From Asterias rubens (Eukaryota), in contig NC_047063.1 in the NCBI RefSeq assembly GCF_902459465.1, positions 868,001 through 932,000 on the forward strand: DNA of 64,000 nucleotides, written 5' to 3'. Of the stretch, positions 43,201 to 64,000 are shown piece after piece. The notes under the pieces are model-generated. The model worked only from the letters and a program-made list of their open reading frames with translations, ran no database searches and was not told the origin of the DNA. The translations under genes and the position numbers were made by a program. Position 1 is the stretch's first letter; each line of letters opens with the position of its first letter.

Positions 43201-43383
43201 TATCAAACTAAGTTTATATTATTCTAGGTAGGCCTGCTGCATGGAGGAAGGAACTTGATTACCTCCATGATAACAATAAAATTATAGCACAAGCAAGAAG
43301 AATTAAAACCAAAAGCATTTACAACGTACCTCAACACGGCATTCCCTTCCTTGCGTTTGAAGAATCTTCACAATTAAAATCAT
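40243..43383 (-). CDS. UBL4A: Ubiquitin-like protein 4A (GET5/GDX), 156 aa. Exons (minus): 43330-43383, 42034-42139, 41054-41253, 40243-40353
   Basis: UBL domain MILIVKILQTQGRECRVE/VTASEPILSVKRMVAKELDVPVHQQRLVFKGKTLS/DGQCLGDYNIGPDTKIHLVIR, then LWDALKTLLHRHFTSSDAEKVLEQFKK/EFSTTIANLSLDDIERI, which matches the UBL4A C-terminal BAG6-binding region (human LTLDDIERL). Phases are consistent. Confidence 0.95.
41556..41936 (-). mobile_element. Kolobok-like MITE, inverted copy (UBL4A intron 2)
   Basis: TTAA on both sides; family internal sequence reversed. Confidence 0.8.
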
Positions 43384-44027: not shown

Positions 44028-47000
44028 ATGGCTAGTAAATCGTCTGCAGTGACCGCAACATTCCTGCACTCATTGTTCATGCAAAGTCTATTGTTTTCTT
44101 TTGTAAGAAGTGATGAAGCTGCTTGTGCCAACTACTGTCCACCAGTGGTAAGTACATCGTCGTAATAGGATTGTTTGTACATATTCATTGTGTTGTGCTA
44201 CTGCTATATGGCACAATTTCCTAACTAAATAAAGCCTGTATCGAGTTACTGCATAGTCGGGTAGTTAATAGTGAAACAACTTGCTATTGCATTGAGGAAA
44301 AAGGCAAGCACAGCACTGTGAGAGTGTGACTGTAAAAAAAAAGCTGATAAGTGATAACTAGCTAGCCAAAATCCCATCAAGTTTACATTGTTGTATGCAA
44401 CCAAATTTATTCCTCCATGATGCAACTAACTCATTACTGATAGTGATTACTGATAGTGCCTGCCCCTTTTTCTTCTGCTTTAGCAAAGAAATTTGCTGAG
44501 CAGTGTTTTCTAGAAATTGGGCCCTGCCCAAATTACCAATGCATGCCACTGGCTGCACTAAAAAAACAGTTGGCAGTACATTTGGGGGGAGGGGTGTCTA
44601 TCTCGGTAGACTGTGCAAGTCTTGCGCGAACCGGAGCGAGAAAACACGACAGACCAAAAACTTGCATTATATCAAATCAAATCTTTGCTTTAAATTATTC
44701 TAAATACCGAATTTGAACAACAAAAATACTCATTAGAGCTTGTTTAATTTAGTTTTAGCTTTTTAAACATTTATGCAATTAATCGGTTATAGTTTATGTA
44801 TAGACAAAAGGAAAATTCTGGAACAAGGATGTTTATTTGATCTTAATTTTTTTTTAACCCCTGTTTGTGTTATCAAAAGCTGGGTTTTATGCGGACGCAC
44901 AATTTTCGCGAGGGCGTTAGATTAATGTTTGAAGCAGTTTAAAGAGGAAGCTGACGCTTAAATGACCAATGAAAAAGCTGTTCACCCCTCGAAAATAAAA
45001 CAAACGTCTGCGTAAGTTTCGTGATTGGAGATGGGCACCAAAATCTTAATTTTGTCAAGTAACTTGACCTGAGGTCAAGTGTTCATGTCGGTTTTTCTTC
45101 GTTTTTTTTATTGTACTTTTATATTATGTTGTATTACATTTTCAACAACATGTAATTATTAAGGTCATCAGTTACCTTAAAGACAGTGGACACTATTGGT
45201 AATTGTCAAAGACTAGCCTTCACAGTTGGTGTATCTCAACAATGCATAAAATAACAAACCTGTGAAATTTTGAGCTCAATCGGGCATCGAACTTGCGAGA
45301 TAATAATGAAAGAAAAAACACCCAATTGTCAAACGAAGTTGTGTGCTTTCAGATGCTTGATTTCGAGACCTCAAATTCTAAATCTGAGGTCTCGAAATCA
45401 AATTCGTGGAAAATTACTTCTTTCTCTAAAACTATGGCACTTCAGAGCCTTTTCTCGTGATGTTTTATACCATCAACCTCTTCCCACTACTCGTCACCAA
45501 GAAGGTTTTATGCTAATAATTATTTTGAGTAATCACCAATAGTGTCCACTGCCTTTAAACTAAAATAATGGACGAAACAAAATCTCCCCAATGTAAAACT
45601 CCATTAGGTTGGGACCACAATGGTCCCGGAAGTTCAAATATGCATGAGAATTGCGTGAAACTCGCACAGTCTATTGGGAATGGGAATCAGGGATGGGCGT
45701 CTGACAAGGGCCGGGGGGGGGGGGGGGTAACTGCAATAGGACAGTGAGTCAAGGGGGTTCTGAGAGGGGTGGGGCTACTGCATCAAGGGGTTCTGAGAGG
45801 GGTGGGGCTACTGCATCAAAGGGTTCTGAGAGGGGTGGGGCTACTGCATCAAAGGGTTCTGAGAGGGGTGGGGCTACAGTGCATTAGGGGGTTCTGAGAG
45901 GGGTGGGGCTACTGTGCAACAGTGGGTTCTGAGAGGGGTGGGGCTACTGTGCAAGGGGTTCTGAGAGGGGTGGGGCTACTGCATCAAAGGGTTCTGAGAG
46001 GGGTGGGGCTACAGTGCAAGGGGTTCTGAGAGGGGTGGGGCTACTGTGCAACAGTGGGTTCTGAGAGGGGTGGGGCTACTGTGCAAGGGGTTCTGAGAGG
46101 GGTGGGGCTACTGTGCATTAGGGGGTTCTGAGAGGCCCGGGGTTATGTCACTGACACATGCTGACTCAAAAAAAGGCTGTCCTGCAAAGAGGTAAAAATC
46201 ACAATTTTTCTCAAAGTGTTGATTGTAATAACAAAAATTATTCCAAGAGAATGTCAGTGTCACATAAAATGACCAAAACAAAAAATGTCATTTTGGGGAA
46301 TTTTGACGAAAACGTGTATTGCTGTGTCAATGCACTTTGTACTTCCACAGCAGATTGTGGAATTAAAAAACAAATTGTGCATAGTTGTACCATCCCCAGA
46401 AGACATTTTCTTAGCTGCTTATAAGCAGAATGTATTGCTTTTAAACACATTTCTGCTTAGCAAAAGATTGCAAAATTCAGGTCACATGAATGTGACCAGG
46501 TTGGACTCCTCCGTCGCATACCAGGGCTAGTGATGCTATTTTCGCAGGTGTCCCTATAAATTCTTAATCTGATACGAAAGGCCTAATCCCAATTTTGTGG
46601 AGCTTACTACTTTCGTGCTGGCGTTCAGTCAGGATTTCTGAGATATTGACACACAGGGTTATTAGTATTATTTATATTTTGAAAAGGATATCGTTGTCAC
46701 AATAAAAGACTAACATGTGCCTCCCATTTTGCTCAAAACAATTGAAACATTCAAAAAAAAAGTTGAGTTTGAACACTTCTGTTTAGTGCTGATATCAAAG
46801 CTTACATGTAAACCCAGTAGACAAATGAGACACATATATCCTAAGTATTCCTTCGATGCTTAAGTTCAAAATCAAAACACATAAAATGTGTGGGCCTACT
46901 TATTTTGATTCAGATCATCTTTTTCCATTTGACTCTGGTCTTGTAAACACAATATTTGTCCAGTAAAATCTTTGAGCAACAACCCATGTGGTCTTGTGGA

Positions 47001-50000
47001 TACTACTATTATATATAAAGAAAGGACAGAGACCCCTATGCCCCTACCCTACCCACCACAAATTGGAGCCCTGTGGATTTACAGACTCTCTGGCAGAGGC
47101 AGTTCTTCTATGGTTCCTCTCTGTGCATAGAGCAAGCACTGTTGTGACCTTCAGTACTAATGGATTATTACCCATAATTAACCTGTCCATGGAGCTGTTT
47201 ACAACCACAAAGAGTAAAAGGGAAAGTCCCATTTCTTTACCATGGAGTGGCACTGATTGACCTTCAGGCCATAATGGTACAGGCTGTTTTGAGCAAACCT
47301 AATGGCTGTTGCCATGGAGTGCAAATAATTTTGTGGGTGAAAGTTTGGCTATGTTATTACTAACTTATTGACAATTGTGGGAAACTAAGCTTGCTTGGGC
47401 CGAGAAACAATAGAAAACAACTTCCTGATGCAACATCAATTATAAATGTAGATCACAGAATACAGGGTTGAATATGGGACGTAAAGCCGTTGGTCCCGTG
47501 TGTTGTGTAACGCATAGAACCCAGTGTACTAATCGAAAAGAGAAGGGGTTAGCCCTGGTGTTCCTGGCGGTTGCTGAGTGCGCCATAAATTGATTGACAC
47601 ATGTAGATGATTGAGTTTGAAGGTGCACCCTTTGTATTTTTAGAGGAAGGGTACATGTACACATATCATAATATTGGCTCTAAGTCTGCTATGTACTCTT
47701 GAGGCAGTGGCATAATGATACATTTTACACTAGTATAGCACCCCCCCCCCCTTTTCTGCTTGTTACCCCACAATCAGAAGGGGGGGGGTGCTATACTAGT
47801 GTACATTTGTGCAAGTTTGGATGTCACCTTTAAGGGGAAGGGGGGGGTAAAGTTTTTGAAATTTTTCTTATGGGGGGGGGATCCTCTCCCTGGTCCCAAG
47901 CAGGGTGAGCACTGAAAATCCATAAATTCGTGTATGCTGGTAAAACAGGAACTAGTCTTATTTTTTTGTCCGAGATGTAGTTACTATGTCAATGTTAAAC
48001 TACCAAGTACTGTATATTGTCGATAGTATAAATTGTTGTTTTAAAAAGTGGCTGTTTCCTTTGACTATAAACTGCTGACAATTTCTGGCTAATCCAGGCA
48101 CAGCAAAGTATGTGAACTTAAATGTGTGCATACTGAAAACTAAGAAGCTTGTTTCAACAGCAATGATCATTGGAATGGACACAGGCTTATTTTGAATACA
48201 ACAGGTACATTTGATTTTTTTTTTTTTTATTTCTATCCATTCTCAAATTTACATCAAAAATGCCTGGAAACATTTACTGCTTTTTTTCATTGACGTGTTG
48301 TTAATATTTGAATGAAATTTGAGGGAAATAAGGCAATTTATAACAAATGTATTAAGTCAAAAGGTGACTGTAGGAAATTGGTTTCCTGTCAAATGCCACA
48401 ATGCTAATCATTCAATTAATAAACATATCCTGTTTTCACTGCATGAATCTTTTTATACATGTAAAATTACAACTATGGTGAGCAAAACCTAAATAAAATA
48501 CAGTAAGGCAAAAAAGGAGAATTTCTGTGTCCAGTTACCTGACTGATCTTAACTTAATGCAGCAAACCTATACCATTTAGTTGGCTTTAAAAAACACAAT
48601 AATAAACAAATAAATACATAAATAAACATGTAATACCCTGGACAAAATGTCTGACTTTGACCAACTTAAGATAAATGATCTAAATTAACTTCACAGGTTT
48701 GCACAATCTGTAAGTTGCAAAATCACCCATAATTCTTTCATCAAGTAAATTTAATAATATAAAATTCACTGAACAGTTTTGCATGACAGTAATACCAACA
48801 ATAACGGTCATCATGTGATTGCATAAATATCACTTCCACCCTTTTCCCCTTGGTCTACGATGTACACTCATTGATTTATATTAGGACAACACATTCCAAA
48901 TCATGCTTACATAACTTGTTTCATAAAATAAGTTTTTTTTTAACAGTTTCTTTATATTTGATTGTTTTTCTTCAGGGTTTTGTGGATGGATGGGAAACTA
49001 CATGCCACCTACAACAGTCAACCGGTATGTACCAACACTTAGTCTTGTTGCAAGACGCTGTTATTCACTATCACTCAACTATTGTGATCCCCCGCTCCAC
49101 TTCTCCCAAGTTGTGGACATTGCTTTGGTGCCCTTAACCATGTTCAGGTCTGACTGATACTTCTCGGAGGCAACAAAGGTGGTTGCCTCCATTCCCCCTG
49201 GTCACTGCCTTGGTGCCCTTGAAATTCTCAAGTAGAAATTTACAATTTCCTCATAGGGTGCCCTTTGCCAAAGAGAAAATGCCTAGGTGCCCTTGCCCTT
49301 TCATAAAAAGAAGCATACAGGCCTGCATGTTCTTTCCCTCATTTTCGTAGCTCCATGCTCATACATTGGGCTAGAAATGCCCTGCCCACATTACATGGTT
49401 TAATACAAGTCATAATTTGTACTATGCCTGTACACAGTGTTTAACACGAAAACATTTTTAAAAACCAATAATAGATATTTTCTTGTTCTGTTACAATCAG
49501 CCAACTGTGTAGACTCAGAGGTCGGGGATGTACCGTCTGCTCCAAGCAAGCTCATAGTTAATGATTTTGTTTATGAAACCCAAGGCACCAGGTTACTTGC
49601 TTTGAATATCACTTGGGTGCTTCCTGTTACTGGTATGTATGTGGTCATTTCCATTTGGTACTTAATATGTGTGGCAACCTCCAACCCCCACGTCCCCATC
49701 CCCATCCCCAGTTAAAGACAGGGGTGAGGGTTAGAATCCCAGATTATGCAAGATGATTGTTTTACTACAATTGCCTCTCTCCACTAAGGGAGGGGGGGGG
49801 CGGGGTTAGTGGGTACCTGCGATGGTAGAGTTTGAAAAAGCCTTTGGATTCCTTAGCAGCTCGGGCTGTATACTCAAGTAAGAGCTGAGAAAGATGGCAG
49901 GAATGGCCCAACGACCAGGGCGCTATATGTATTAGTGCATCGATTCATGATTGTAAAGATTCATGATTGTAAAATGTGCTACATGAGAATTTGTTTTAAA

Positions 50001-53000
50001 CACTTTCACAAACTTGTTAATTATCAAGAACTAGTTACTATTGTTATTTAACCTAAGTTGTCTTGCTCCATTGTTCAATGAAGATGGACTTGACTAATGA
50101 AACCACTTTGTCCCAAAAGTCCTCCAAACACAAGACTTTAAAGCCAAAGAATGCCAAAAATCACTTGGCCAAATGAAACGGAATAAAATCAAATCAACCG
50201 ACAGGAATTTGAAACTGAATGATGCATATGTGATTATTGTTTTGATGCAGGGAATTTCACTGGACTTGAAGGTTTCTACGTATACGTCATGAAAACAAAC
50301 TATCCAGTTGGCTACTCTGAATGCAATGGAATCCGTTTTGATCGTCCGCTCACAATGTCAACATCCTTTGAATCTGAGGTGAGACGTAAATCATGTCAAA
50401 ATCAAACTGCACAGTTGGAGTCAAATATGAGCGTGAAAAGCAGCACAAAGGGTTTGCGTAACCTGACACTTCAAGCCGTTAACCTTTTTTTTTGCTGCAC
50501 CGTAACTTGCTCTGATTAATGTGCATGGTAGGAGATTTTGTGGCCCCGGAAATTAAAGATTGTCTATTCACGTGTCACAAGAGATTTCCTAGGAATGCCT
50601 GCCATTCTATTGTTATTCCATCTGCCATGCACACACAAGAAGAAGAAGAAAGAGTCGTGTAGTCATGATAGTATGGGATGCTGGGCGTGGTATAATAAGT
50701 CGGTATGTAATTGGTAACTAATTCTTAATGCTTTCTTTGCAGATTCTATTCCAGTTTTCCTGTTTGCGGAACATTAAAATGGACAGCCATTACAGTATTG
50801 AGATAACATCAATTGGGTCAAAACAATCCAATAAACGAGATGATTATCACACATCAAGTAAGTAGGCCTTTTTATAGTCCCCTAATTTGTCTGCTTACTG
50901 TAGATTTAGTAATTTATGGAGATTGAATCCTCATCTGTTGATATGAAGAAAGGGGGTCATCTCAAAAGGTGTTGAAATTATGACACAAAATGTCAAATTT
51001 CCGATATGACCAGTGTAGTATCTTGCCTATCAGAATGGGCCTTGAGTGTCAACTCGTTTATTCACGTCATCCGACGTGAAGGTGTTATAAGGAAGGACAT
51101 GTAGCATTAACTATAAATATTAATGTGTAAAGCTTTCAGTGGTTTATTTCCAAACTAGGTTGTGTACGCAAACCAGGAGTTGGAGGGTGTCCCTTGGTCA
51201 TTGGTAAGTGTGTATAAATTATAACAAATCTTATCAATCCAAATATTTTGATGAGGTGATCCCTTGGCTGCCGTTTCCCAGGTTACATTGCAAACTTGGG
51301 TGCTATTCCTGTCAATATGGCAGCCAAAGGTTTTAGGGTTTCTGACTGGCACCCCCCCTGCCCCCCCCCACAAAAAAAAGAAGATCCCTGCCCCCTCCCC
51401 CAAACAAAGATTATGACAAAATAGAGAGACCACCATTACAGCTAGATAGCTCAATTGGTAGAGCACTTGCGCATTAATCTGCACTGTCAGGTTCATATCC
51501 CATTCTAGTCAATTTGTCTTACTTCGACCAAAATTGAAGTTAAGAAAAATCCTTGCATTCATTCCTTGAAAAAAAAATGTATTTTGAGAAAATAAAGTTC
51601 TAAGAGATGTACACTAATGTTTTAGGTTCCGTGGAGCTCTAAATAGTTGTTTTGGTCAGTGAAGTTTTACAGCAGTATCGTGTAGTCAGGATCCCTGTTC
51701 AATTATGGCTTATTGAATCTCAATAAATTCAGCATTTTGTTTTGATCATAGATTTTTCTAAATCCTTGAATCTTCTTTTATTTGTGCAAATTTTTCTCCA
51801 CAGAACCAGCGGAGGAATGGAAACCTTCACAGGTACCAACCATCATAGTGTCGTACAACACCGTGTCTGTAAACACCGTGTCTGTTTTGTTCAGTACATA
51901 TCCAGGGGATAGGTGGATAAACTACCAGATTAATCTACAACCCTGTAATGGAAGATCAACTCCCGCAGCACTATCTCAAATTGTCAACACCAATGGCTCT
52001 GTAAGTTTTTGTCTTGGCTGAATGAACCTGCCCAAAGGTGGTCTAAAATAATGGTGGGGTGTCATGGCCGAGTGGATAACACCAAACTCAAACTCTTGGG
52101 TTTCTGTTCGAGTCCCCGTCGTGACACTTGTGTCCCTGGGCAAGACACTTAACTATAATTGCTACTCTCCACCCATGGGTAAATGGGTACCTGTGAGGAC
52201 AGAGATGGTTCTTGTGATGGGTTTAGCTTAGGATCACATACATAACGTGTTTCACAGGCTGTATTACTCCTGAGGGAGCTGATATGGTTTTAGGAATGAA
52301 TAAAGGCCAAGCGACCAGGATTAATACTGATGGAAGCACTTTGAGATGCCCTTTGGGTGTGTGAAGCACGGTAAAAATCGATTATTATTATTATTATCCT
52401 TATTATTATTACAAATATTGATTTAATGAGTGCATTATCACAGACTATTTTTCTTTTCAGACTGGAATATACGTATATGTGTTTAAGGATGTACCACCAG
52501 GTTGTTATAGTGCACGTGTAAGTAGCACATTGTTGCAAACCATGTAAAATATGAAATCTAGGTTTTCAGTAGGTCGATCTGGGCTTGAACGCATTACAGT
52601 CCTCTTTCATTTCCATAAGAGAGTGTCACTGCTCACACATGGTGCGTTCGTTTAGCTTTCCTGGGTCGACCCCGGTCTGCCCCCGTCCATTCGAATAGCT
52701 TTGCCGGGACTCACCCGGGTCAGCCCCCAGTGCCCTGCTTGTGGAGTGGGTCACTTGGGGGTGACCTGAGGTGTATGCCGTCATCACGAGAGAGCGAGTG
52801 TGATAATTCGATTAGCTCTTGTCAGGGGCTCACTGGAGTGAGCACTAGGGGGTTGACCCAGGGAAGCTTATCGAACGCACCCACAAATTTGTGGGGGAAA
52901 AAAAACAGTGAGAAACTGTGGAATAATAGCAAAATGTAGCTTGAGCAATTTTGCTTAAGGATAAATTCTTTCAGGGTATGTCAGTGTTTATATAACCGTC

Positions 53001-56000
53001 GGACTAATCCTGTTCTATGGAATATATACGTGCCATGACATTGTAGGTTACCCTCTACCAGAAGCCAACTGGGGGAATCGTTGATGGACGTCCAGTTCGG
53101 TCTGCACCTTTCAATGTTACCAGAGTGACAGTCGGGCCGACTGAGGAACCAACAACTTCACCTGATGCTGAAGACAATAATGGTAACTTGTTTTTGTTTA
53201 CAAATTATTTTATCGCATTAAAAGCCTTTTTTTAAAGGAAAGTTACATTTGTAGATTTTTAAGTGAGAAAAAACTCTATCATAGTTTATCAAAAGACACC
53301 TTAGCTTAATGCAATTTGTTCATGTCATGGCTGGTTTTTGTTAACTGAAAATAAAAACAAATGGTGCTCAGGAAAAAAAAGACGCAAAAATAGACCAAAC
53401 TTGTATCGGGCATTCATTTTCCAACTACCACCTATGTTCGCTGTGCGAGCGGCAGCGCTAACACACCAGTGTGCCTTTTCCATTCTTAATATAAAATAAA
53501 AAGTATGTTTTACTATAATTAATTTTTTCCTCGTTAAGGGCCTACTGGACTTTATGTGTTACATCCAAGAAAAATTATGCTCTAAACATTTTTTCTTGTT
53601 ATCATGAGGTTCATCAGTTTTTTGAACAAGTGACTGTAAAATGTCTTTCCAAATATGATTTTACAAAAACCTTTTCTTTTGTTTATGATGCAGTTATCAG
53701 AATTTCATCTCAGAAACCAGGAGGACTCGCAACACCAGCTGATGTTGGTAAAAACATTGGTAACTTTAAAACACCGATTATTTGTTAATATTTTAAGTAT
53801 TTGTATTCTAAACTAGAATTACTCTTGAAGTATTTTTAAAGGATTATGACATGATTAATATTTGGAGGAATAAATTACACTCAGTGGTTTTCCCAAAACA
53901 CCATTCAACCAACATGTACAATCTTTGGCAAATTCCACTGGCTCACTTATAAATTTGAAGCGACAGAAAACTGTTAGTGTTAGTGCCTCGCATTTCACTC
54001 ACCTAAACTTTAACATGTTTTCTGCATATGATGGAATGTTTTGGATACGAAATGTGTCACACTTGATGCTTATTGCAATTGAAAGCAGTGGTCACCAATA
54101 TATGTGACCATCCACCACCAATAGGCTGTAAAGTCGCACTTGCACATTGCAGAGCCTATTAAATTGTTTGGGTTTTCAAAAAAACTTTGAGAAATCTGAA
54201 TAAAAAAATATGTGGCTTTGAGAAATCATAACTTTGTCAAGAAATATCTGATTTAAATGTGGATGGTATCATTTTGAAGCTGATTACACACTCTCTCAAA
54301 AAATGCATTAATCCCATAACAGTGAAAGTGTCAACTTTACAGCCCATTGGTGGTGGATGATCACATATCAACTTAAAATAGTGCAATGTGCAGTTGGAAC
54401 AGCTTGGTACGTAGAGTGTGATATGGGACCATGCTATGCTTTAATATCACTCTGTTGTTGCCATGGATAGTCCAATCAGAATGAAAGATGCAAGTTTCTT
54501 GATAACACATAATGCAAACCAGAAGTACCAAGAAAACAATTGGTTGATGTGACAACTTGTTAAGAATTCATTTGGGCAATTCCATGGTCAGTCGCATTAC
54601 ACTTTTCTGTGTCATTTCTCGATCTTGGTGCTAGTAGTTCTCAGTGAGATATTCTGTCCACTAAGTTTAAAGAGACTGATTTGTACTTGACACCCAAGGC
54701 TTTGAATTGATGATATTAGAAATGTTGTGGGCTTTGTGCTCTGGATGTTATAACGTTGTTAAAAGCGGTCAGTCGCACGCATTACACAAAAAGGACATGG
54801 TAAAAAACACACTTGTACAATTCAAAAATTTCCTCTAACCAAAAAGCTTGCAAAAGTGTCGCTATATGTAACACAAAACTCTGATACATGAGTATCCAAC
54901 AGGATACTTATAAATGGTCAGCAACTTGAACTTTTAGGTATACATGGCAAAACCATGGTCAGTCGCATTAGAGTTTTCCAGTCAATTAAGCCACGCCTAC
55001 ATGGAGCCCAAGCTGAGTTCTTATTTGGCAAAAATGGGTTCATTCCTTGTCAACAACTAAAAATAAATTGGTTTCATATGTTAGCTATAACTTCTAAGTG
55101 GAAAGAAAGTTGTGTCAAAAACGGTGTCATGTCCATGTTTGCGTGGAATTGCCCATTTGTTTATTTATTTTGTGTCATTATTAATGCCAGAGGACAAACC
55201 GAAGACATTGTTACTTGAAGGACTGATCGGAGCAGGAGTTGGCGTAGCAGTGGCTATACTTCTCCTGCTTACCTTCGTCGTTAAGAGACAAAGATCCCAG
55301 GGACAAAGCGAAATAGTCAGCCCTCAAGAGACTCCCAGAGCAGGCCTTGTCAATAACATGGTTCAGAATGATTGTGAGTACAACAACAGTAGTCAAAACT
55401 AGACGTAGTGTTTTTTGTTAATTACAAAAACACGGTGTTCGGTTGGACGTTACGTGATGACGTAGTTCAAAAACATTGAACCATAAAGATGTTTTTTATA
55501 CAATGCGTCGTTATTTTATAGTTAAGCTTGTATCACACTTTTGAACGACTTGTTTCTTCACAAATGCAATATGTTTGTGTGAGATTGACATCAGTTTTTT
55601 TGTTTGCAACTTATGAAAGCCCTTTAAAAATCTAGCTCACCCCTGCACTGGATGCTGTACACAGATTTGATAATCAACAGCGCCCTCTTTGGTGGGCAAA
55701 AAGAGAGCGCTGTTGGGAATTCCGCCACAAACTTTCGCGCCATATGATTTTTACACATTTTATTGTTATTCAATACCTGATGACGTCATTATGACGTAAT
55801 TAGGCCTGTGTTGTCTTAAAAATACTAAGGTTCAACTATCTATTGAGTTTCAAGGTTCAAATCGATCTCAATCTTGAGTTATGCCGTAGATAAGCTCAAA
55901 AGTGTTTTTTTTATGAAAAAAACACGAAGGCGAACTTTGACCCAGGGTAACGACCCGGAAGTTAAGGTGGTACGATTTTAGCGTTAACTTTTCAAATGTT

Positions 56001-59000
56001 GTCCAAGTCTTTATCTATCCGATGCCCAAGTATGAACATCATAGCTTTTATATTCGTTGAGATACAGCAACAAGCAAATGGTCCTTTTTTAACATTAAAA
56101 ACCTTGTCATGACGTCATTAATGCTGCATCATTCCAAAAAAGTGGCGGTTTCATCTTCTCACTATTGCCGATGTACACAGTAAGTTTTAAGTTTGTACAA
56201 GCTTTACTTTTGTTTAAAATTGCTTGGGAAGGTTCAGAGGTAAAGAAGAACACGAGGAAAATTAAATCTATGAACAGATTGTTGATAGCTTTTTAATTTT
56301 CACAGAAAGTAAAAGTGTAAATCTATTACATTTATACCTTTCTTTGCACAGAAAACAAATGCTAAGTTTAATACTTGTTAAAGCGATGTATTTTATTAGT
56401 AAAGAGCTAACTATGTGCAAAGTTTGAAGGTTTTGTGATCCTTGTGATGTTTAACTCAAGAGTAAACTTCTTAAAAGGTTAACTGGATTTGGGGAAACTT
56501 TATACGAAACAACAGTTTACTAATTTTAGACTTGTGAAGTAAATAACTGTAAAAGACTTATTTATTAAGTATTACAGAGGTTTCGCAAGTGTACGACACG
56601 GGTACAGATACAACTAAGATAACTGGGATGCACGTTAGATTTTGTTAGGCATTAAATAAACACTTATTTTGAAAAGCAATGATTTGTACACAAAGCTTTA
56701 CCGTGTAGCGCGCTAAACACTGCCGTGAGTGCCGGATAGAAACACCCTTCACGAGTCGATGTCACGAATCCGCTTCCCGGTGTTTGATCAAAACATAACC
56801 AATGTTCGTCTTTTTCTGGTTGCATTTTCTCACATAATTAAAAGTCATACGAATCGCTGCAGTAGGTGGCCATCTCAGCGAAGCTTCGTCTTTAATTCCG
56901 TTTTGATAATTAAGCCATGAGAAGGGCGAACAGGGGAACAATTTGACGCCGAATATAATATGAGCGGACTTCAATTGTAAAATGTTGGTAAACCATTAAA
57001 CTAGCGCTACGTTGTAAGTACAATGACCTGAGACTTGTCAAAACATGAATCGAAATCACGCGTACAGTCAAACGATGCACTATTCCGAGCAGAACACACA
57101 GGCCTCGTGGACTGAACAAGGTGTGATCAATGGAGCGGAACGGCCAGGCAAAGCGCTTTTGCAGTGTACGCAGTTATCACGCGGGTCAACACATCCGTGG
57201 GCTTTATCGTCCGATTTCGACCAGAGTTTCAGGTCAAATTGGTATCATCTCTGTGGGAAAGTTTGAGCAGGATCACTCATCTATAACGGGATGCAAAATT
57301 TATGTTGAAATGTTACGTAGTTTTAGAGATCAAAAATTGTAAAATTGTTCAACCTTTGGTTTGAACCGGAAGTCAAGGTCAAATGGGGTCATTTTGTGTG
57401 TAGCGTTTTTTGAAGTTTGATCGACCTGTCCGATGATATGTAGATTGTCAAAATCCACCATGTGGTTCAGGAGTTATGATTTCTTTAAAATATTTAACTT
57501 TGATTTGTTGTAATTCAAAACCTGATGACGTCATCATGACATCATTAAGTTTGTGTGGTCTTATTATTAAGGTTCAATTGTCTGATGAGTTTCAATGTTA
57601 AATTCCATATCAATCTTGAGTTATGACAACAAATTGTCTTTTTTTACAAAAAAACACAAAAAACACAAAGGCAGAGTTTGACCTTCCGGTACGACCAGAA
57701 GATGAGGTCATACGATTTTGGCGTTAACTTTTCAAATGTTGTCCAAGTCTTTATCTATGTGATGCCCAAGTATGAACATCATAGCATTAATATTCGTTGA
57801 GATACAGCGAAAAGCAAATGTCGTTTTTCAACTTTAAAAACCTTGCCATGACGTCATCAATGACGTCATCATTCCCAAAAAGTGGCGGTTTCGTCTACTC
57901 ACTATTGCCGATGTACATAGTAAGTTTTAAGTTTGTACAAGCTTTACTTTTGTTTAAAATTGCTGGAGAAGGTTCGCAGGGAAAGAAGAACGCGAGGAAA
58001 AAAAAAAACAAAAAACAGAACAATAACAATAGTTGTTCGGCTGTTGGCCGAACACCTAATTAAATTAAACTGTTACTAGCAAGCAGAGACAGCTAATGTT
58101 GGGAAAAAAGTTAGTGGCCCATCACAAAATCTGGTGGCCAAAGAGGTTATTTTAATGTGAAACTGTTCAGCCTCGTTATGCCAGTAACAAAGTATTAGTA
58201 AGCTGCGCACAAAATAGCTAAGCACCATAGAATATGCTTCCACATGGATAAGATTACCAGCCAAAATAACATTTCATTGTGTATCATTTGTAACCGGGAA
58301 TTTAATGCACCATTTTCCGGTAAAGCAGCTCTATGAAATTGGTTTATCTGCACTTAAAATTTTGCCTACCAATACCATTGATTTTGGAATGTAGGTAAAG
58401 TTCTTACTCGCCTTAATTTCTCCATATACCTGCCCCTTACACGACCCAAAGCTATCCTGTGTAATGTTATAATATAATATATAATATAGAAGTCTTATAG
58501 CACACTATCTACCAACAAGGTACTCAAAGTGCTAGGGATATACAAACTTTCAGAAAGATAGGTTATTGAAGTGATGATAATTCTGAGACCCAATTATGTA
58601 GCACCTTATAAGGGTTAACAAGGTGCTACGGCGAATACAAAAGCCACAGCCAGGAACACCAGGGCAAACCCCTTCTCTTTTCGAAAAGTGCACTGGGTTT
58701 TTTACATGCGTTACACAACACATGGGACGAACGGCTTAACGTCCCATCCGAAGGACGAAGCAATGGTTAAGTGTCTTGATTAAGGACACAAGTGTCACAG
58801 CTGGGGACTCGAACCAACACTCTGCATATCAGAAACAGTAGAGCTTTTAATATTATTTTCTTGTTTATTGTGTTGCAGTGACGGGACCAGGCTACTGCGA
58901 TACCTATGGACATGGTGATAGTGTCAGTGTGTTCCGATCGGAATGTTCACAATGCTGTGATTATGCTGGTTACCCGGACAACCCAGAAGACTTTAAATCT

Positions 59001-59030
59001 GTCACTAATATGTCTGGGGTTACAGTGTAG
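44028..59030 (+). CDS. Type-I membrane protein with IL-17-receptor-like FnIII ectodomain and a short SEFIR-less tail, 440 aa. join(44028-44147,48976-49024,49501-49632,50251-50378,50743-50857,51804-52000,52461-52517,53047-53182,53694-53747,55191-55373,58879-59030)
   Basis: All 10 introns are GT-AG, phases chain without a stop, and the total is 1323 nt. It has an N-terminal signal peptide, sequons (NIT, NFT, NGS, NVT), a TM segment (LIGAGVGVAVAILLLLTFVV followed by KRQR) and a stop at 59030. Ectodomain pattern LNITW..P / LEGFYV / C / F.FSCL..Y.IEI / W.P / VSVLF resembles IL17RA/RD FnIII modules (recalled similarity). Confidence 0.8.
45181..45554 (+). mobile_element. Kolobok-like non-autonomous DNA transposon (MITE)
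   Basis: TTAA on both sides, AG..CT termini, TIR agacagtggacactattggt / accaatagtgtccactgcct. Confidence 0.8.
45753..46134. repeat. G-rich 33-36-bp minisatellite, ~12 copies
   Basis: Unit ggggttctgagaggggtggggctac(t/a)g(t)gca(tc)aa. Confidence 0.95.
47468..47600 (+). mobile_element. SINE fragment (Deu/Nin-like domain)
   Basis: Homologous to the SINE body at 2943-3029/3197-3230. Confidence 0.55.
47728..47801. mobile_element. 74-bp fold-back element with CACTA termini and TA flanks
   Basis: ta-cactagtatagcacccccccc ... ggggggggtgctatactagtg-ta. Confidence 0.65.
52060..52410 (+). mobile_element. tRNA-derived SINE, second family (CORE-like body) with (tta)n tail
   Basis: gtcatggccgagtgg...ttcgagtcccc...gggcaagacacttaac...ccacccatgggtaaatgggtacc. 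Related reversed copy at ~61640-61900 and fragment at ~49790-49960. Confidence 0.55.
52641..52881. mobile_element. MITE with ~30-bp imperfect TIRs
   Basis: ggtgcgttcgtttagctttcctgggtcgacccc ... ggggttgacccagggaagcttatcgaacgcacc. Confidence 0.7.
55399..58060 (-). mobile_element. Non-autonomous Helitron/Helentron-like element with internal ~490-bp direct repeats
   Basis: On the minus strand it ends CTAG|T with an 8-bp-stem hairpin just inside. The other end has the hairpin tgttcggc/gccgaaca. Sub-terminal IR ggtgttcgg (55434) / ccgaacacc (58048). Blocks ~55775-56265 and ~57520-58005 are repeated at an offset of ~1740. No Rep/helicase ORF. Confidence 0.55.
58490..58835 (-). mobile_element. tRNA-derived SINE (Deu/Nin-like domain) just upstream of the last IL17R-like exon
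   Basis: Reverse B-box (ggggactcgaacc), body shared with 47468-47600, (ata)n tail. Confidence 0.6.
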
Positions 59031-60077
59031 GTACAAACTTACATGTATCTGTAAACAATTGTCTCAATCATGTTGTATTTGTCTTAATTCCATAGTACTC
59101 AGAACACTTAATGATACATGGCCTACTCAGTAAAATAAACTTGGTATATGCAGTAAAACTTGGGTGAAAGCTTAGGGGGACACAGAGTGGTGCACCGTTT
59201 TTTCTTGGGGAGGGAGGGGGGAGGGGGGGAGACTTTGAAATTGTAGTTTCCGTTTGCATTTATCCAAGACAGGCCCCTTTTAAAGTGTACTCTTTATGTC
59301 ATAAGATTTATAACCTGGCATGGAGGTTAAAAGAAAAATACATTGTGTGCATAAATATAGAGAAATGGTTTAAAAACATTGTACATAAAGTATTTCACCA
59401 ATTAGTTATCAAAAGTCCATATTACAAATTGGGGGTGGGTGGGGGTACAGAGATCAATCAGGGGGAGGGGGATGTGCCCCCCCCAACCCCTTATAGTTAC
59501 GCCACTGGTTTTACTACCTTGGTTGAAAGAGCAAGTTGAGCAAATTCCTCTTGCTGATAGTAATTGAAAATTTGACTGGCCCGAGATGGTGTTTGCTATG
59601 CAAATATGAGCAATTTCAAGTATTTTGTGAAAATTAGTTGGAAAGATTATGAGCAACTTGCAGGCCCGGCTTAAACAAAATAGTAACGTAAATCCTTATA
59701 ATATGTTTAGCCCCTAAAGCATGGTGGCACGTTTTCATAATTGACAATTAAAATATGAGCTTGTCCTTAATTTTTTTTCCCTGTTTTTCAGTTGACCCTG
59801 TGTGTGTGCATAATCTAGATTTTAGTTTTTATTTTTTTTAATTTTTACTATTTTGAATATATTATATATATATCGTCATTTTTGGGTTAAATTGCTTTGT
59901 ACAGCGCACTGATGCCTCTGCTTTGTACTATTATTATTGACAAGTTGTATGCGTGATACTGTGTTTATTTCAAAAGGCTTCGGATACTTAAGGGTTTTGT
60001 ATTAATTGTGATATTTCTACTTCAATAGCGATTTTAAAGGTCAACTTACACGGATTTTAAGTACTATATTGAAATAA

Positions 60078-60456
60078 AGACAGTGGACACTATTGGTAAT
60101 TGTCAAAGACCAGTCTTCTCACTTGCTGTATCTCAACTTATGCATAAAATAACAAACCTGTGAAAATTTGAGCTCAATCGGTTGTAGAAGTTGCGAGATA
60201 ATAATGAAAATAAAAAACACCCTCGTCACACGAAGTTGTGTGCTTTCTGATGCTTGATTTCGAGACCTCAAATTCTAAATCTGAGGTCTCGAAATCAAAT
60301 TCCTGGAAAATTACTTCTTTCTCGAAAACTACGCCACTTCAGAGGGAGCTGTTTCTCACAATGTTTTATACTATAAACCTCTCCCCATTACTGGTAATAA
60401 AGAAAGGTTTTGTGGTGATAATAATTTTGAGTAATTACCAATAGTGTCCACTGCCT
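60078..60456 (+). mobile_element. Kolobok-like MITE
   Basis: agacagtggacactattggtaatt ... aattaccaatagtgtccactgcct-ttaa. Confidence 0.8.
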
Positions 60457-61639
60457 TTAAGATATGTCAAAATATTCACAGAAATTTTAAGAAATTAAAT
60501 ATTTTAATACTAAAAGTGGTTGAGACGATACGGCATCTACCGTATTTCTAACCATGCTGACAAACAAGTCAGTTAAATGTACAACCTAAAATCTTTTACA
60601 AAAATAAAATTATCTTTGAAATTGGTTGCTGTTACAGCTTTTAAAGTTGGTGGTTTTATGTGACACTAATTTCTTCTATAGGTTACTTTAAAATGTTCTT
60701 TTATTTCATCACTGTTTTTCTGAAGCCAATTTAACCACTCAAGCCAAACTTTCATCTTTAGAGAATGCATTTTTTTAATCTTTAACTTGCCGCCGACTGT
60801 TTGCCAACTTAACTTTGACATTTCAGCAAACATGACAGTAGAAATTATTACATCGTGTATTTCTGGGGTTATTTTGATCATAGTAAGTTTAATCGATGAG
60901 TAGTTAACAACTTAATAAAATTAAGGTTTGTGCAGCGCTTGTTACAAACCAATTCACAAATGGAATCGGCTGTTTGTGAAAACTCCAAAATATCTACAAG
61001 CTGCATTTTACATTGTAAAACCCACAAAGGTTGAGCATTTGTTTTTCACACCGAGTCAGTGCTAAAGAATGGCAATTCAAAGAATAGCTTTTCGTGAAAA
61101 CCCAAACTGTAAGTCTGGTTAAATTAGTGTTATCAAAACTATTTTTGGACTTTCAAAATGTTCAAATGTTTAAAGCCACATCCTATTTGCCCAAAATGTT
61201 TAATTTGTTAGAGTTGGCTGTTCATGAAAAAGACGTTATTTGTAAAAGTGATTTGGGTCAATGTACACTTCCCAAAGCCACCAATGTTACTTTTATTTCT
61301 TCTTTAATGTACTCTTTATATTTTTTTATTTTGTTTACGTGGCACTATATTTATAAAAGAGTGTACAACTTTCCAAGTGTTCGTCAAAAGTTGTTAAACT
61401 TAAAACATTAACGGATTATATTTTTGATTACTCAGCGGTTTACATGCATTTTGCAGAATAAAGTGCTCTTAACATTAAAATAAAAAAATGGAAGTCAAGT
61501 GTTTTATTTTTGTTATCAATTTTGAGGAAATGCAACGTTCATATCACGTACAACTTCAGACAATTATCTTATTTACATGTATAATAATAACTTATTAGCC
61601 AGTTTACAAAAACATATCAATGCAGTTTACATTAGTGCC

Positions 61640-61900
61640 CTGGTCTAACTTTGGGCCAATGGGTCTCGGCTCACTGGGGAGTTAACAGCCCTGAGCCGCC
61701 CTGGCCCTCCAGTGGCCTTTACATACACAATATCAACCTCTACCCTCGCAGGTACCCATTTATACCCCCTGGGTGAAGACAAGCAACTAGCGTGAAGTGT
61801 CTTGCTCAATGACACAAGTGCCATAATACAACTGGGATTGGAACCCACCCTCCATTGACTTGAACTTGAATCTCTAAATCACTCGGACACAACACCCTAT
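61640..61900 (-). mobile_element. SINE of the 52060 family, reversed
   Basis: ggtacccatttataccccctgggtg...aagtgtcttgctcaatgacac...gggattggaaccc. Confidence 0.55.
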
Positions 61901-62365
61901 AAAAATTGAGAGAAATAGTGACACAGAATATTCTGCCTTCTCTGCATCCTTCATTTGTAGGAAAACGGTTTAAATCAAACAGACTACAGTCGTTGGTTGA
62001 ACAAGAATATGGGTTGGAAATGATTACCAGCCATTGTTTTCCAACCCTTCCCCCCAAAAAAAATCAGCACACAATCAACCCACATCCCCCCCCCCCCAAA
62101 AAAAAAAAAAAAACACCCTCCAAAAAACAAACCCATGTTGCACAAGTCAAAAGGTTCTGAGAACAAAAAAAAATAACAACTTTGTTTTCTCTTTTTTTTT
62201 CATTTAAAGGAATGGTGCAGGGGGAGCGGTAGGGTGGAGGAGGGGGGGGGGGGTACAGGGTAAGAGCATGGTGCATAATTCTTCATAACTCCAGCTGCCT
62301 ACCGCATTAAAGCAGCACAAGTTTGGTTGGGCAAAATTTACACTCTTTGACACTTATATGTCATG

Positions 62366-63509
62366 TCATAACCCATATTTCTTCCCAAGTTTGTCCAACT
62401 CTGAAGCCCTTTCAGCTTCAGAGCTCTGCATGTAGCTGAAGAGTTCTTGCACAACTGAAAACAAGAGGGACATGTAAAAGAGTTATTAGTGACATGTATG
62501 GGGATCAGATCTGGCAGCAAACTAAGCTACCGAAGTGGCAATAGTTTGTTTAATTTTCACACCTATTTAAATACATGTAGATATAATATGCAGTGAAATT
62601 CACTTTGGTTTCAAGTCTACAAAACATCAAAATTACAAAACAAAATCTACACTACTAATTTTGGTTTTTACCCATACACCAATGTGTGTTAGCACTGTAT
62701 ACTCAGTACTTTCCCCCGAGTCCTGTGAACAAATATCACAGGCATATTACTCGGGTGGGATTCGCACCTAGACCCTTGCAGATCTAGAGCAGTGTCTTAC
62801 CAACTAGACCATCGGGGTTGCCCGGTAGCTAGCTAACACACATCGGTGTATGGGTAAAAACCAAAATTAATATTCTTTAACCCCGATGCAAATTTAACAC
62901 AATCTACACTAAAACCACGTAGAGGCTACACAATAACAAATAATCAATAGGCACGTGTATTACGCAAAGAAAACAACAGTGAAGAGTAGCCGACCCCCAG
63001 AAAACATGATTCAACAAGTATTTATGTTTTGTATGGCCGTGATCAGTGGCTTAAATGGGGTAGGGTTGGGGGCTTCAGCCTCTCATCACTTCCCTACTCT
63101 AGTCGCACCCCAACCAAAAAGAGATCAATGGAAACAAATGTCTGAAAAGCAGGACTATGTGGTTAAAAATATTTATATATATATTTTTTTGTTTATCACA
63201 ATGATTGCATCTTGTCATGCTTGTGATGCCAATGGTTGAGAAAAGCAAGACAAGTGGCCCATATTGTGTAGACTTTCCTGAAGACTATTGCTGTGTGGGG
63301 GCAGGGGGGAGTGGGGGCAGGTAAATGGCACTTGGAGCGGGCATATGCCCCCCCCCCTGAGTGCCCCTCTTTTTTATGAGTACAGCATACATCCCTCCAC
63401 TATATTGCACCTACCTTGTTTATCTTTGGATGACATGAACATGATGTTCATTTCAAATCTTTTGACCTGGGAGAGGTTCTCCAGGATTTCATAGACACGT
63501 TCTCCTTGT
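62366..63509 (-). CDS. Last two exons of an unidentified protein (63415-63509; 62366-62454), 5'-partial
   Basis: GT-AG exons join in phase 1: QGERVYEILENLSQVKRFEMNIMFMSSKDKQ/VVQELFSYMQSSEAERASELDKLGKKYGL*. The gene presumably continues beyond 64000. Confidence 0.75.
62656..62869 (-). mobile_element. tRNA-like SINE bracketed by 38-bp inverted repeats
   Basis: 62656-62693 is the reverse complement of 62832-62869 at 37/38 positions; reversed tRNA-like head between them. Confidence 0.6.
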
Positions 63510-63722
63510 CTGTTTACAAACACAAACAAGACATGTCAGTATTTCAATTTGGGTAACCAAACATGAAACAAAACAATGGGTATTATTATTATTAATTTTA
63601 TTATTATTTAATGTACCGTTAAGTTAACCATGTTTATATCTAGTTGAAAAAGTAAACATAAGTTTAATTGAGTTTATGGCAAAAAATGCAGTTTAACTAC
63701 TTGAAATAATAAATAATAAAAA

Positions 63723-63928
63723 AAAAGTGAAATAAATATCTAACAAATTAAATAATTAACCAAATGACTCAACAACTCAATGCCTAAATACCTAACAGTC
63801 TAAATAAATACATTAAATACAATACAAAAGTGAAATAAATATCTAACAAATTAAATAATTAACCAAATGACTCAACAACTCAATGCCTAAATACCTAACA
63901 GTCTAAATAAATACATTAAATACAATAC
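63723..63928. repeat. Perfect 103-bp tandem duplication (intronic)
   Basis: 63723-63825 is repeated at 63826-63928. Confidence 0.9.
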
Positions 63929-64000
63929 ATACCTGTATACATTAATCAATTAATAAATCAATCAATAAATAAAACAAATTTTATGCAGTTGGTTTATAGC

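What the first reader, a model, noticed from the sequence alone, without database searches (positions are those of the whole stretch)
44028..59030. IL-17-receptor-like type-I protein with no SEFIR/TIR domain: candidate decoy or co-receptor
Seen: 11 exons, each too short to be recognisable alone in the ORF track, chain in phase into a 440-aa protein. It has a signal peptide, two FnIII-like modules, a Thr/Pro-rich stalk, one TM helix and only ~80 cytoplasmic residues before TAG 59030. Known: IL-17 receptors have tandem FnIII ectodomains (IL17RD VTILWSP..LKGFRV; IL17RA W.P..LRVSF..YQILL) and signal through a cytoplasmic SEFIR domain and Act1. This protein shows the matching pattern (LNITWVLP, LEGFYV, EWKP, VSVLF, YQINL). 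The next gene ends at 62366 on the opposite strand, and no SEFIR-sized ORF lies in 59030-62366. Inference: an invertebrate IL-17 (or other cystine-knot ligand) receptor that cannot recruit Act1, acting as a membrane decoy, ligand presenter or co-receptor. It would be easy to misannotate as hypothetical.
Basis: partly seen in the sequence, partly recalled or inferred. Interest (0 to 1): 0.78.

Follow-up and report, generated by a model that had tools for sequence, protein, structure and literature searches.

The report
Starfish IL-17-receptor-like protein lacking SEFIR
This starfish (Asterias rubens) gene, split into two "uncharacterized" genes in the public annotation, encodes one 459-residue membrane protein whose outer part most resembles an interleukin-17 receptor but which lacks that family's signalling domain, so it may be a decoy or helper receptor.

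Summary
On the + strand, 44028-59030, twelve GT-AG exons (not eleven) chain in frame into a 459-aa type-I membrane protein, not 440 aa.

RNA contigs from three Asterias rubens runs and one relative confirm eight of the eleven junctions and show one mRNA. A cDNA-like orthologue contig (481 aa) is collinear over all exons and the 3' UTR. GenBank splits the locus into a 183-aa and a 300-aa "uncharacterized" product.

No SEFIR or TIR domain exists. The tail is 80 aa with no Pfam match, no downstream ORF matches SEFIR, and the orthologue's UTR runs unspliced to about 62021.

The IL-17-receptor link is convergent but below threshold:
- Pfam ILCR1_N scores E 0.003 and IL17R_fnIII_D1 E 0.052, both under cut-off.
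- IL-17RA, RB or RD rank first in four structure libraries, by about tenfold, from a model whose D1 is poorly predicted.
- D2 is a generic FnIII domain, and HMMER against PDB sequences finds nothing.

The Act1 argument is moot, because echinoderms lack Act1. The tail is the most conserved mature part (dN/dS 0.27-0.34, ectodomain 0.54-0.77), which argues against a passive decoy.

Verdict: real, misannotated, probably a SEFIR-less IL-17R-like chain comparable to mammalian IL17REL. Its function is untested.

The parts
44028..44147 (+). Exon 1: start codon, signal-peptide-like segment, first two Cys (aa 1-40)
   Evidence: ATG and GTAAGT donor. 76% identical to the P0007 N-terminus. Part of the NCBI 183-aa product.
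48976..49024 (+). Exon 2 (49 nt): Cys-rich N-terminal stretch GFVDGWETTCHLQQST
   Evidence: AG/GT sites. tblastn match to P0007 residues 41-56. blastn match to L001 379-428 with the same boundaries.
49501..49632 (+). Exon 3: start of D1 (…LNITWVLPVT)
   Evidence: RNA joint 49632/50251 in 4 runs. Orthologue match.
50251..50378 (+). Exon 4: D1 (NFTGLEGFYVYV…CNGIRFD…)
   Evidence: RNA joints on both sides in 4 runs.
50743..50857 (+). Exon 5: end of D1. The NCBI upstream model reads through this donor to a stop at 50863-50865.
   Evidence: RNA joint 50857/51159 in X2 and X10. An unspliced contig is present at about 1.5% of the spliced depth (record 10).
51159..51203 (+). Exon 6 (45 nt): D1-D2 linker with the Cys-x8-Cys loop.
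   Evidence: RNA joints 50857/51159 and 51203/51804. Matches P0007 182-195.
51804..52000 (+). Exon 7: first half of D2 (EEWKP…YQINL…). Holds a 15-nt in-frame repeat at 51848-51885 that varies in copy number between runs.
   Evidence: RNA joints. Tandem repeat. A +15 or -15 nt indel appears in the contigs (tables 4 and 8).
52461..52517 (+). Exon 8: D2 strand with the conserved Cys (VPPGCYSAR)
   Evidence: RNA joints 52000/52461 (4 runs) and 52517/53047 (3 runs).
53047..53182 (+). Exon 9: end of D2 (FNVTRV) and start of the Thr/Pro-rich stalk
   Evidence: RNA joints. 100% match to P0001.
53694..53759 (+). Exon 10: stalk. 12 nt longer than in the NCBI model.
   Evidence: RNA joint 53759/55191 (GT..AG) in X1, X2 and X10. 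Sequence.
55191..55373 (+). Exon 11: end of the stalk, TM helix (aa 357-379), KRQR stop-transfer, first part of the tail
   Evidence: RNA contigs cover 55190-55373 and run on beyond it (table 8). Translation.
58879..59030 (+). Exon 12, coding part: conserved C-terminal 50 aa and TAG
   Evidence: Junction present in P0001 (split Leu codon) and in L001. RNA runs X1 and X2 hold 73% of the words of 58879-59700.
59031..62021 (+). Probable unspliced 3' UTR, about 3 kb, of the same terminal exon
   Evidence: The 3' UTR of orthologue contig L001 aligns collinearly at 58876-59381, 61244-61572 and 61908-62021. No Pfam match for its ORFs. Its 3' end was not mapped.

Best explanation
One Asterias rubens gene encodes a 459-aa type-I membrane glycoprotein. 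In order it has a signal peptide, a 4-Cys N-terminal stretch, two FnIII-like beta-sandwich domains (D1, D2) joined by a small disulfide loop, a Thr/Pro-rich and probably O-glycosylated stalk, one TM helix, and an 80-aa cytoplasmic tail with no SEFIR/TIR domain.

The ectodomain is most probably a fast-evolving relative of the IL-17 receptor double-FnIII module, closest to the IL-17RD, RA and RB types.

Inferred mechanism, not shown:
- The protein binds a dimeric cystine-knot IL-17-type ligand. A. rubens has four IL-17 genes.
- Lacking SEFIR, it cannot join SEFIR-SEFIR assemblies. It therefore acts as a non-canonical chain, either sequestering ligand at the membrane as mammalian IL17REL does in soluble form, or more likely pairing with SEFIR-bearing IL-17R chains as an accessory or modulating subunit.
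- Its conserved tail, with a Cys-Cys pair, conserved Tyr residues and an acidic [DN]P[ED]DF stretch, would serve trafficking, palmitoylation or adaptor docking.

Shown: gene structure, single mRNA, domain layout, absence of SEFIR, and the pattern of selective constraint. Inferred: IL-17R homology (about 0.65) and the decoy or co-receptor role (about 0.35-0.4).
For: Gene and mRNA:
- 12 GT-AG exons.
- Eight junctions seen in RNA contigs. Single contigs of 1737 nt (X2) and 2425 nt (X3) span exons 3-11 and run on at both ends.
- Orthologue P0007 (481 aa), from the intronless 3627-nt contig L001, is collinear with all exons.

IL-17R likeness:
- Precomputed Pfam hit PF16556 IL17R_fnIII_D1 (weak) on P0007.
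- hmmscan of D1 alone gives ILCR1_N E 0.003 and IL17R_fnIII_D1 E 0.052, the latter covering profile positions 22-132 of 154.
- Foldseek against PDB: five of the top six chains from model 1 and all of the top ten from model 2 are IL-17RA or IL-17RB. Alignments span about 250 columns at 15-18% identity.
- Swiss-Prot rank 1 is IL-17RD.
- AFDB clusters rank 1 is an unnamed 741-aa protein, and rank 6 is IL-17RD-like.
- ESM Atlas row 1 is an IL-17RD cluster.

No SEFIR:
- No family found in P0001, which contains the TM helix and tail.
- Downstream ORFs give nothing.
- The orthologue's UTR is collinear with the genome.

Tail constraint: dN/dS is 0.34 for the tail and 0.27 for the last 40 aa, against 0.68 for D1, 0.54 for D2 and 1.33 for the stalk.

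Literature:
- About half of invertebrate IL-17Rs have a double-FN3 too degenerate for domain models (PMC11087794).
- Echinoderm IL-17Rs were catalogued by SEFIR searches only, so a SEFIR-less chain would have been missed (PMC5457136).
- IL17REL is reported as an IL-17 decoy (Li et al. 2026, as cited in 10.64898/2026.04.13.718218).
Against: - Every IL-17R signal is below the curated cut-offs (18 and 13.7 bits against 27 and 26).
- Foldseek margins over generic FnIII tandems (contactin, sDscam, ihog/Boc) are only about tenfold.
- TM-scores are 0.2-0.35, and D1 has pLDDT under 50 in both models.
- VIA-align ranks D2 with fibronectin, EpoR and IFNAR2 as highly as with IL-17RA or RB, at Z about 9.
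- No Pfam IL17R_fnIII_D2 hit.
- phmmer and hmmsearch against PDB sequences find no IL-17R.
- Language-model neighbours are class I/II cytokine receptors, all scoring below 0.9.
- The exhaustive search with exon 7 found only this gene's own NCBI product. The word-indexed searches found only that product and one orthologue.
- No ligand, partner or expression data exist.
Confidence: 0.6

Rival explanations
1. A double-FnIII receptor of another class, such as a class I/II cytokine-receptor-like, tissue-factor-like or ihog/Boc-like protein. It would bind a helical cytokine or another ligand, and its IL-17R resemblance would reflect only the shared tandem FnIII layout.
For: - ESM feature neighbours are IL3RB, CSF2R, IFNGR1, IL27B and IFNAR1 clusters.
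- ihog, Boc and CDO score almost as well as IL-17RD in Swiss-Prot.
- D2 matches EpoR, IFNAR2 and IL-22R1 at the same Z as IL-17RA.
- One Cys pair per domain is also typical of class II receptors (own knowledge).
Against: - All ESM scores are below 0.9, which the tool calls leads only.
- No WSXWS motif is visible in the translation.
- No Pfam fn3, Tissue_fac, IL6Ra-bind or EpoR_lig-bind hit even at E 10.
- IL-17R chains take rank 1 in four libraries, and the only receptor-family Pfam hits are IL-17R family D1 models.
Confidence: 0.2
2. A lineage-restricted sea-star surface glycoprotein, for adhesion, self-recognition or an unknown receptor role, with no functional link to cytokine signalling. 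The sub-threshold IL-17R hits would be chance or reflect very ancient shared ancestry without shared function.
For: - Only two sequences of the family were found in the searches run, against libraries of 1.8 and 5.8 billion proteins.
- Overall dN/dS of 0.53 and an in-frame repeat polymorphism in D2 show fast evolution.
- The conserved tail has no known motif or domain.
Against: - Independent methods (two Pfam models, four structure libraries) converge on one family, which is unlikely by chance.
- All ten ectodomain Cys and three of the four ectodomain N-glycosylation sites are conserved, which indicates a constrained fold.
- The exhaustive search used only one 83-aa exon, and the other searches are word-indexed and length-limited, so the apparent restriction to sea stars is weakly grounded.
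Confidence: 0.15
3. Two separate genes, as in the GenBank annotation: a secreted 183-aa D1-only protein and a 300-aa membrane protein with its own first exon at 50916-50966.
For: - NCBI models.
- A low-depth unspliced contig crosses the exon 5 donor (record 10).
Against: - The exon 5>6 joint 50857/51159 lies in contigs at depth 47 (X2) and 529 (X10), against 7 for the unspliced form.
- Single contigs span exons 3-11.
- The orthologue encodes one 481-aa ORF.
- The alternative first exon lies in a bin with word depth over 10,000 in X1 and X10, which suggests a repeat (table 2).
Confidence: 0.05

Closest known systems
IL-17 receptor D (Sef) and IL-17RA/IL-17RB ectodomains (Pfam IL17R_fnIII_D1 PF16556, ILCR1_N PF25519; PDB 4HSA, 7WG3, 7UWK, 5N9B)
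   Same: - Type-I topology.
- An ectodomain core (N-terminal Cys stretch, D1 and D2) of about 280 residues: an N-terminal Cys-containing stretch, an atypical first FnIII-like domain, a short disulfide loop at the D1-D2 junction, and a second FnIII domain.
- Best structural and profile matches in every library tried.
   Different: - No SEFIR domain. The cytoplasmic part is 80 aa, against roughly 400-500 aa.
- Sequence similarity is below Pfam thresholds, and there is no IL17R_fnIII_D2 or IL17R_D_N hit.
- A Thr/Pro-rich stalk is present.
IL17REL (mammalian IL-17 receptor E-like), reported as a decoy for IL-17A, IL-17F and IL-17C (Li et al. 2026 Nat Immunol, as cited in bioRxiv 10.64898/2026.04.13.718218)
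   Same: An IL-17R-type ectodomain without SEFIR, and the expected mode of action, which is competition for ligand.
   Different: - From my own knowledge, IL17REL has no signalling tail, and I believe it is secreted. Neither point was checked here.
- This protein is membrane-anchored with a conserved 80-aa tail.
- There is no evidence of orthology, and this is probably an independent loss of SEFIR.
- Ligand binding is untested here.
Sea urchin SpIL17R1 and SpIL17R2 (PMC5457136)
   Same: Echinoderm type-I receptors of the IL-17 system, working in a phylum that lacks Act1/CIKS.
   Different: The urchin receptors have ectodomains of 535-662 aa and a SEFIR domain, and were found by SEFIR search. 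This protein is much shorter and lacks SEFIR. No direct sequence comparison was possible with the tools.
Membrane decoy receptors of other cytokine families (IL-1R2, IL-13Ralpha2)
   Same: A ligand-binding ectodomain with a TM helix and a short tail that lacks the family's signalling domain (own knowledge).
   Different: These have unrelated folds or families. Their tails are short and poorly conserved, whereas this tail is the best-conserved part of the mature protein.

Membership tests
IL-17 receptor family (IL-17RA-RE, invertebrate IL-17R) | Cytoplasmic SEFIR domain (PF08357) | tested here: not met
   No Pfam family at E up to 10 in P0001, which holds the TM helix and tail. The tail is only 80 aa. 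No SEFIR in + strand ORFs from 59031 to 64000. The orthologue mRNA ends at the same place, with a collinear UTR.
IL-17 receptor family | First FnIII-like domain recognisable as IL17R_fnIII_D1 or ILCR1_N | tested here: inconclusive
   On orthologue P0007 residues 60-185: ILCR1_N E 0.003 (18 bits, cut-off 27) and IL17R_fnIII_D1 E 0.052 (13.7 bits, cut-off 26). The precomputed PF16556 hit is 'weak'. The window's own D1 could only be scanned exon by exon, with no hit.
IL-17 receptor family | Second FnIII-like domain of IL-17R type (IL17R_fnIII_D2, PF16578) | tested here: not met
   No hit at E up to 10 for P0007:180-310 or P0001:30-160. Structurally D2 is a generic FnIII domain: Z 8.6-8.9 to IL-17RA and RB, and 9.0-9.2 to fibronectin and EpoR.
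IL-17 receptor family | Overall ectodomain fold closest to solved IL-17R ectodomains | tested here: inconclusive
   IL-17RA, RB or RD is the first named match in PDB, Swiss-Prot and the ESM Atlas. In AFDB clusters rank 1 is an unnamed 741-aa protein and rank 6 is IL-17RD-like. TM-scores are 0.2-0.36, margins are about tenfold, and D1 has pLDDT under 50.
IL-17 receptor family | Type-I single-pass topology with an N-terminal signal peptide | tested here: met
   Hydrophobic N-terminus at residues 1-28 and a single TM helix at 357-379 followed by KRQR. AF2 models a helix at the orthologue's TM segment. No dedicated signal-peptide predictor was available.
IL-17 receptor family | Binds an IL-17-type cystine-knot ligand | not testable with these tools
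   Needs binding assays or confident complex modelling. A. rubens has four IL-17 genes (PMC8353272).
Class I cytokine receptors | WSXWS motif in D2 and fn3, IL6Ra-bind or EpoR_lig-bind profile hits | tested here: not met
   No such motif is visible in the 459-aa translation. No such Pfam hit at E up to 10. Only ESM feature neighbours scoring below 0.9 point this way.

The most novel reading that the evidence does not exclude
Sea stars keep a membrane-anchored, SEFIR-less IL-17-receptor chain whose own conserved 80-aa tail transmits or shapes IL-17 signals. It would be a component of the still unknown Act1-independent IL-17 pathway of echinoderms, not a passive decoy.
Probability: 0.2. Interest if true: 0.75.

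Novelty: new variant of a known kind. Interest (0 to 1): 0.5.

Why it matters
Echinoderms have IL-17 ligands and SEFIR-bearing receptors but no Act1/CIKS adaptor, so how their IL-17 signals are passed on and restrained is open (PMC5457136, PMC11087794). Published receptor catalogues were built by searching for SEFIR, so SEFIR-less chains are invisible to them.

A conserved, expressed IL-17R-like membrane protein without SEFIR would be a candidate regulator or accessory subunit of that pathway. It would be an invertebrate counterpart, probably independently derived, of the recently reported mammalian decoy IL17REL.

There is also a practical result. The public annotation splits this gene into two "uncharacterized" products, and the corrected 459-aa model is needed for any functional work.

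Tried and rejected
**Searches that gave nothing or little**
- Pfam on single exons gave nothing.
It found only the gene's own NCBI product plus low-complexity chance hits, so no deep homologue set could be built.
- Three word-indexed searches, including an ectodomain-only one, found only P0001 and P0007.
- phmmer and profile searches against PDB sequences gave only chance hits such as ASF1A, or none.
It is another sea star at dS about 0.36.
- Earlier findings of this scan held nothing on IL-17R or SEFIR.

**Structure prediction**
- Both AlphaFold jobs used an effectively two-sequence alignment. D2 came out well (pLDDT 70-88) but D1 poorly (20-50), so a D1-specific fold comparison was not possible.
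- VIA-align re-ranking could not separate IL-17R from generic FnIII.
- Alignment A4 was discarded because fragments were misaligned.

- The full spliced 459-aa window protein could not be handed to Pfam or structure tools. It has no reference, and I did not type it in. The orthologue P0007 (76% identical in D1) and P0001 served as proxies.
- I recall motif-level matches to human IL-17RA (W..L…LEG in D1, the Cys loop followed by WxP at the D1-D2 junction, YQI.L in D2). These come from memory only and were not tested.

**Reading rejected**
- The two-gene reading of the annotation.
Full report
**What the window is**

The 300-aa NCBI protein LOC117307333 of Asterias rubens (P0001) matches the window exons at 100%. 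The NCBI locus L002 (GCA_902459465.3, LR699093.1) maps onto the window with an offset of 40915. The window is therefore common-starfish genome.

**Gene structure**

No single exon gave a Pfam hit. An exhaustive HMMER search with the exon 7 translation returned P0001. A search with P0001 then returned P0007, a 481-aa orthologue encoded without introns on a 3627-nt contig, L001 of GCA_014845345.1.

A tblastn of P0007 on the window laid out twelve collinear pieces. Reading the splice sites gave twelve exons, all with AG acceptors and GT donors and all in phase.

Logan contigs of three A. rubens runs (X1, X2, X10) and one run of a related organism (X3), laid on 49450-55440, show these GT..AG joints:
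- 49632/50251
- 50378/50743
- 50857/51159
- 51203/51804
- 52000/52461
- 52517/53047
- 53182/53694
- 53759/55191

The last joint moves the exon 10 donor 12 nt downstream of the NCBI choice and adds GKNI, so the product is 459 aa. One 1737-nt contig (X2) and one 2425-nt contig (X3) cover exons 3 to 11 and continue at both ends, so this is one mRNA.

**Annotation error**

GenBank carries two adjacent genes here:
- A 183-aa product, which is exons 1-5 read through the exon 5 donor to a stop at 50863-50865.
- The 300-aa P0001, which starts in a different first exon at 50916-50966 and uses a longer exon 6.

The spliced 5>6 joint has word depth 47 and 529 in two runs. An unspliced contig across it has depth 7. 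The alternative first exon lies in a bin with depth above 10,000 in X1 and X10, which suggests a repeat. I read the split as an artefact.

**The 3' end and the missing SEFIR**

- The tail after the TM helix is 80 aa and ends at TAG 59028-59030.
- P0001, which contains the TM helix and tail, has no Pfam family even at E 10.
- Ten of the 19 stop-to-stop segments of 45 codons or more on the + strand from 59031 to 64000, including all those of 59 codons or more, were scanned. They gave only chance-level hits (E 0.06-0.1) to unrelated families, and none to SEFIR or TIR.
- The 3' UTR of the orthologue contig aligns collinearly with 58876-59381, 61244-61572 and 61908-62021. The terminal exon therefore probably runs unspliced for about 3 kb, towards the convergent RPAP3_C/TPR gene that ends at 62366.
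- RNA runs X1 and X2 hold 73% of the sampled words of 58879-59700.
It is present in P0001, with a split Leu codon, and in L001.

**Protein layout**

| Residues | Feature |
|---|---|
| 1-28 | hydrophobic signal-like segment |
| 29-62 | stretch with four Cys |
| about 63-182 | D1, two Cys, two N-glycosylation sites |
| 183-192 | Cys-x8-Cys loop |
| about 197-310 | D2, two Cys |
| 311-356 | Thr/Pro/Ser-rich stalk |
| 357-379 | TM helix, then KRQR |
| 380-459 | cytoplasmic tail |

All ten ectodomain Cys and three of the four ectodomain N-glycosylation sites (NIT, NFT, NVT) are conserved in P0007.

**Is it IL-17R-like? Evidence for**

- The collection's precomputed Pfam annotation gives P0007 a 'weak' IL17R_fnIII_D1 hit.
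- In my scans the top family for full-length P0007 is ILCR1_N, the N-terminal domain of the nematode IL-17R-like ILCR-1, at E 0.027.
- For D1 alone, ILCR1_N reaches E 0.003 and IL17R_fnIII_D1 E 0.052 over profile positions 22-132 of 154.
- Foldseek with two separately predicted models puts IL-17RB and IL-17RA chains first in the PDB. With model 1 they take five of the top six places at E 4.7e-7 to 3.2e-6. With model 2 they take all of the top ten at 6.9e-8 to 9.6e-7.
- IL-17RD is first in Swiss-Prot.
- In AFDB clusters an unnamed 741-aa entry is first and an IL-17RD-like entry is sixth.
- An IL-17RD cluster is first in the ESM Atlas shape search.

**Evidence against**

- All Pfam scores are under the gathering cut-offs.
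- The models are poor outside D2: mean pLDDT is 42 and 50, and D1 is below 50.
- TM-scores are 0.2-0.36, and generic FnIII tandems follow within about a factor of ten.
- VIA-align scores D2 no better against IL-17RA or RB (Z 8.6-8.9) than against fibronectin or EpoR (Z 9.0-9.2).
- There is no IL17R_fnIII_D2 hit.
- HMMER against PDB sequences finds no IL-17R.
- Language-model neighbours are class I/II cytokine receptors at scores below 0.9.

The literature notes that about half of invertebrate IL-17Rs have a double-FN3 too degenerate for domain models (PMC11087794). Weak signals are therefore expected even for true members.

I put IL-17R ancestry of the ectodomain at about 0.65. By the usual definition, which requires SEFIR, the protein is not a family member. 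It is an IL-17R-ectodomain-like protein.

**Function**

A. rubens has four IL-17 genes (PMC8353272).

I compared the window CDS with the orthologue CDS by the Nei-Gojobori method. Overall dS is 0.36.

| Region | dN/dS |
|---|---|
| N-terminal Cys stretch | 0.77 |
| D1 | 0.68 |
| linker + D2 | 0.54 |
| stalk | 1.33 |
| TM helix | 0.35 |
| tail | 0.34 |
| last 40 residues | 0.27 |

The ectodomain evolves fast, as immune receptors often do. The tail is the most constrained part of the mature protein, which a passive decoy would not need.

My best reading is a non-canonical IL-17R-type chain that binds an IL-17-like ligand and modulates signalling. It may act as an accessory subunit or as a membrane decoy whose tail controls trafficking or docking. 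This step is inference only.

A precedent for a SEFIR-less IL-17R relative acting as a decoy is mammalian IL17REL (Li et al. 2026, as cited in 10.64898/2026.04.13.718218).

**Novelty and score**

I found no paper on such a protein in echinoderms, and published catalogues used SEFIR as the search key (PMC5457136, PMC8353272).

The kind, a signalling-domain-less relative of a cytokine receptor, is known. The membrane-anchored form with a conserved tail in a phylum lacking Act1 is a new variant, if the homology holds.

Interest is 0.5. The gene is real, expressed, conserved and misannotated, and it is a testable candidate. Set against that, homology is sub-threshold and function is unknown.

Noticed in passing
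window 51848-51885 (exon 7): A 15-nt in-frame tandem repeat (unit NTVSV, 2.5 copies) in the first strand region of D2 varies between runs. Contigs of X1 and X10 carry one more unit, and contigs of X2 and X3 show a 15-nt gap. The orthologue P0007 lacks 5 aa at the same place.
   Followed up: partly
window 44028-50865 and 50916-59030 (L002 3113-9950 and 10001-18115): The GenBank annotation of A. rubens splits this single gene into a 183-aa and a 300-aa 'uncharacterized' product. The second model's first exon (50916-50966) lies in a stretch with very high word depth in all runs, which suggests a transcribed repeat.
   Followed up: yes
window 52050-53049 and 54050-54449 (introns 7-8 and 10): Word depths of 10,000-200,000 in RNA contigs, with many loose ends, point to high-copy and probably transcribed repeat elements inside the introns.
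   Followed up: no
window 45705-46130 (intron 1): A tandem array whose translation reads GSERGGATAS/VLRGVGLL in several frames. It is a simple minisatellite in the first intron.
   Followed up: no
window 11989-13176 (+): An uninterrupted 395-aa ORF with strong MGAT4_cons (E 1e-71) and MGAT4A_C hits. It looks like an intronless N-acetylglucosaminyltransferase IV-like gene or a large exon.
   Followed up: partly
window 35826-37691 (+): A 621-aa ORF with a Major Facilitator Superfamily hit (E 7e-22).
   Followed up: partly
window about 40916-43383 (-) and 62366 onward (-): Flanking annotated genes are a 156-aa product with ubiquitin-family Pfam hits upstream (possibly a ubiquitin-ribosomal fusion such as RPS27A, from my own knowledge of the length) and a 522-aa TPR/RPAP3_C protein, convergent downstream.
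   Followed up: no
L001 (GCA_014845345.1 JACSEG010002680.1): A contig in a record filed as a genome assembly carries the orthologue as an intronless ORF with 5' and 3' UTRs. It is either cDNA-derived sequence or a processed retrocopy with an intact ORF. The species could not be identified.
   Followed up: partly
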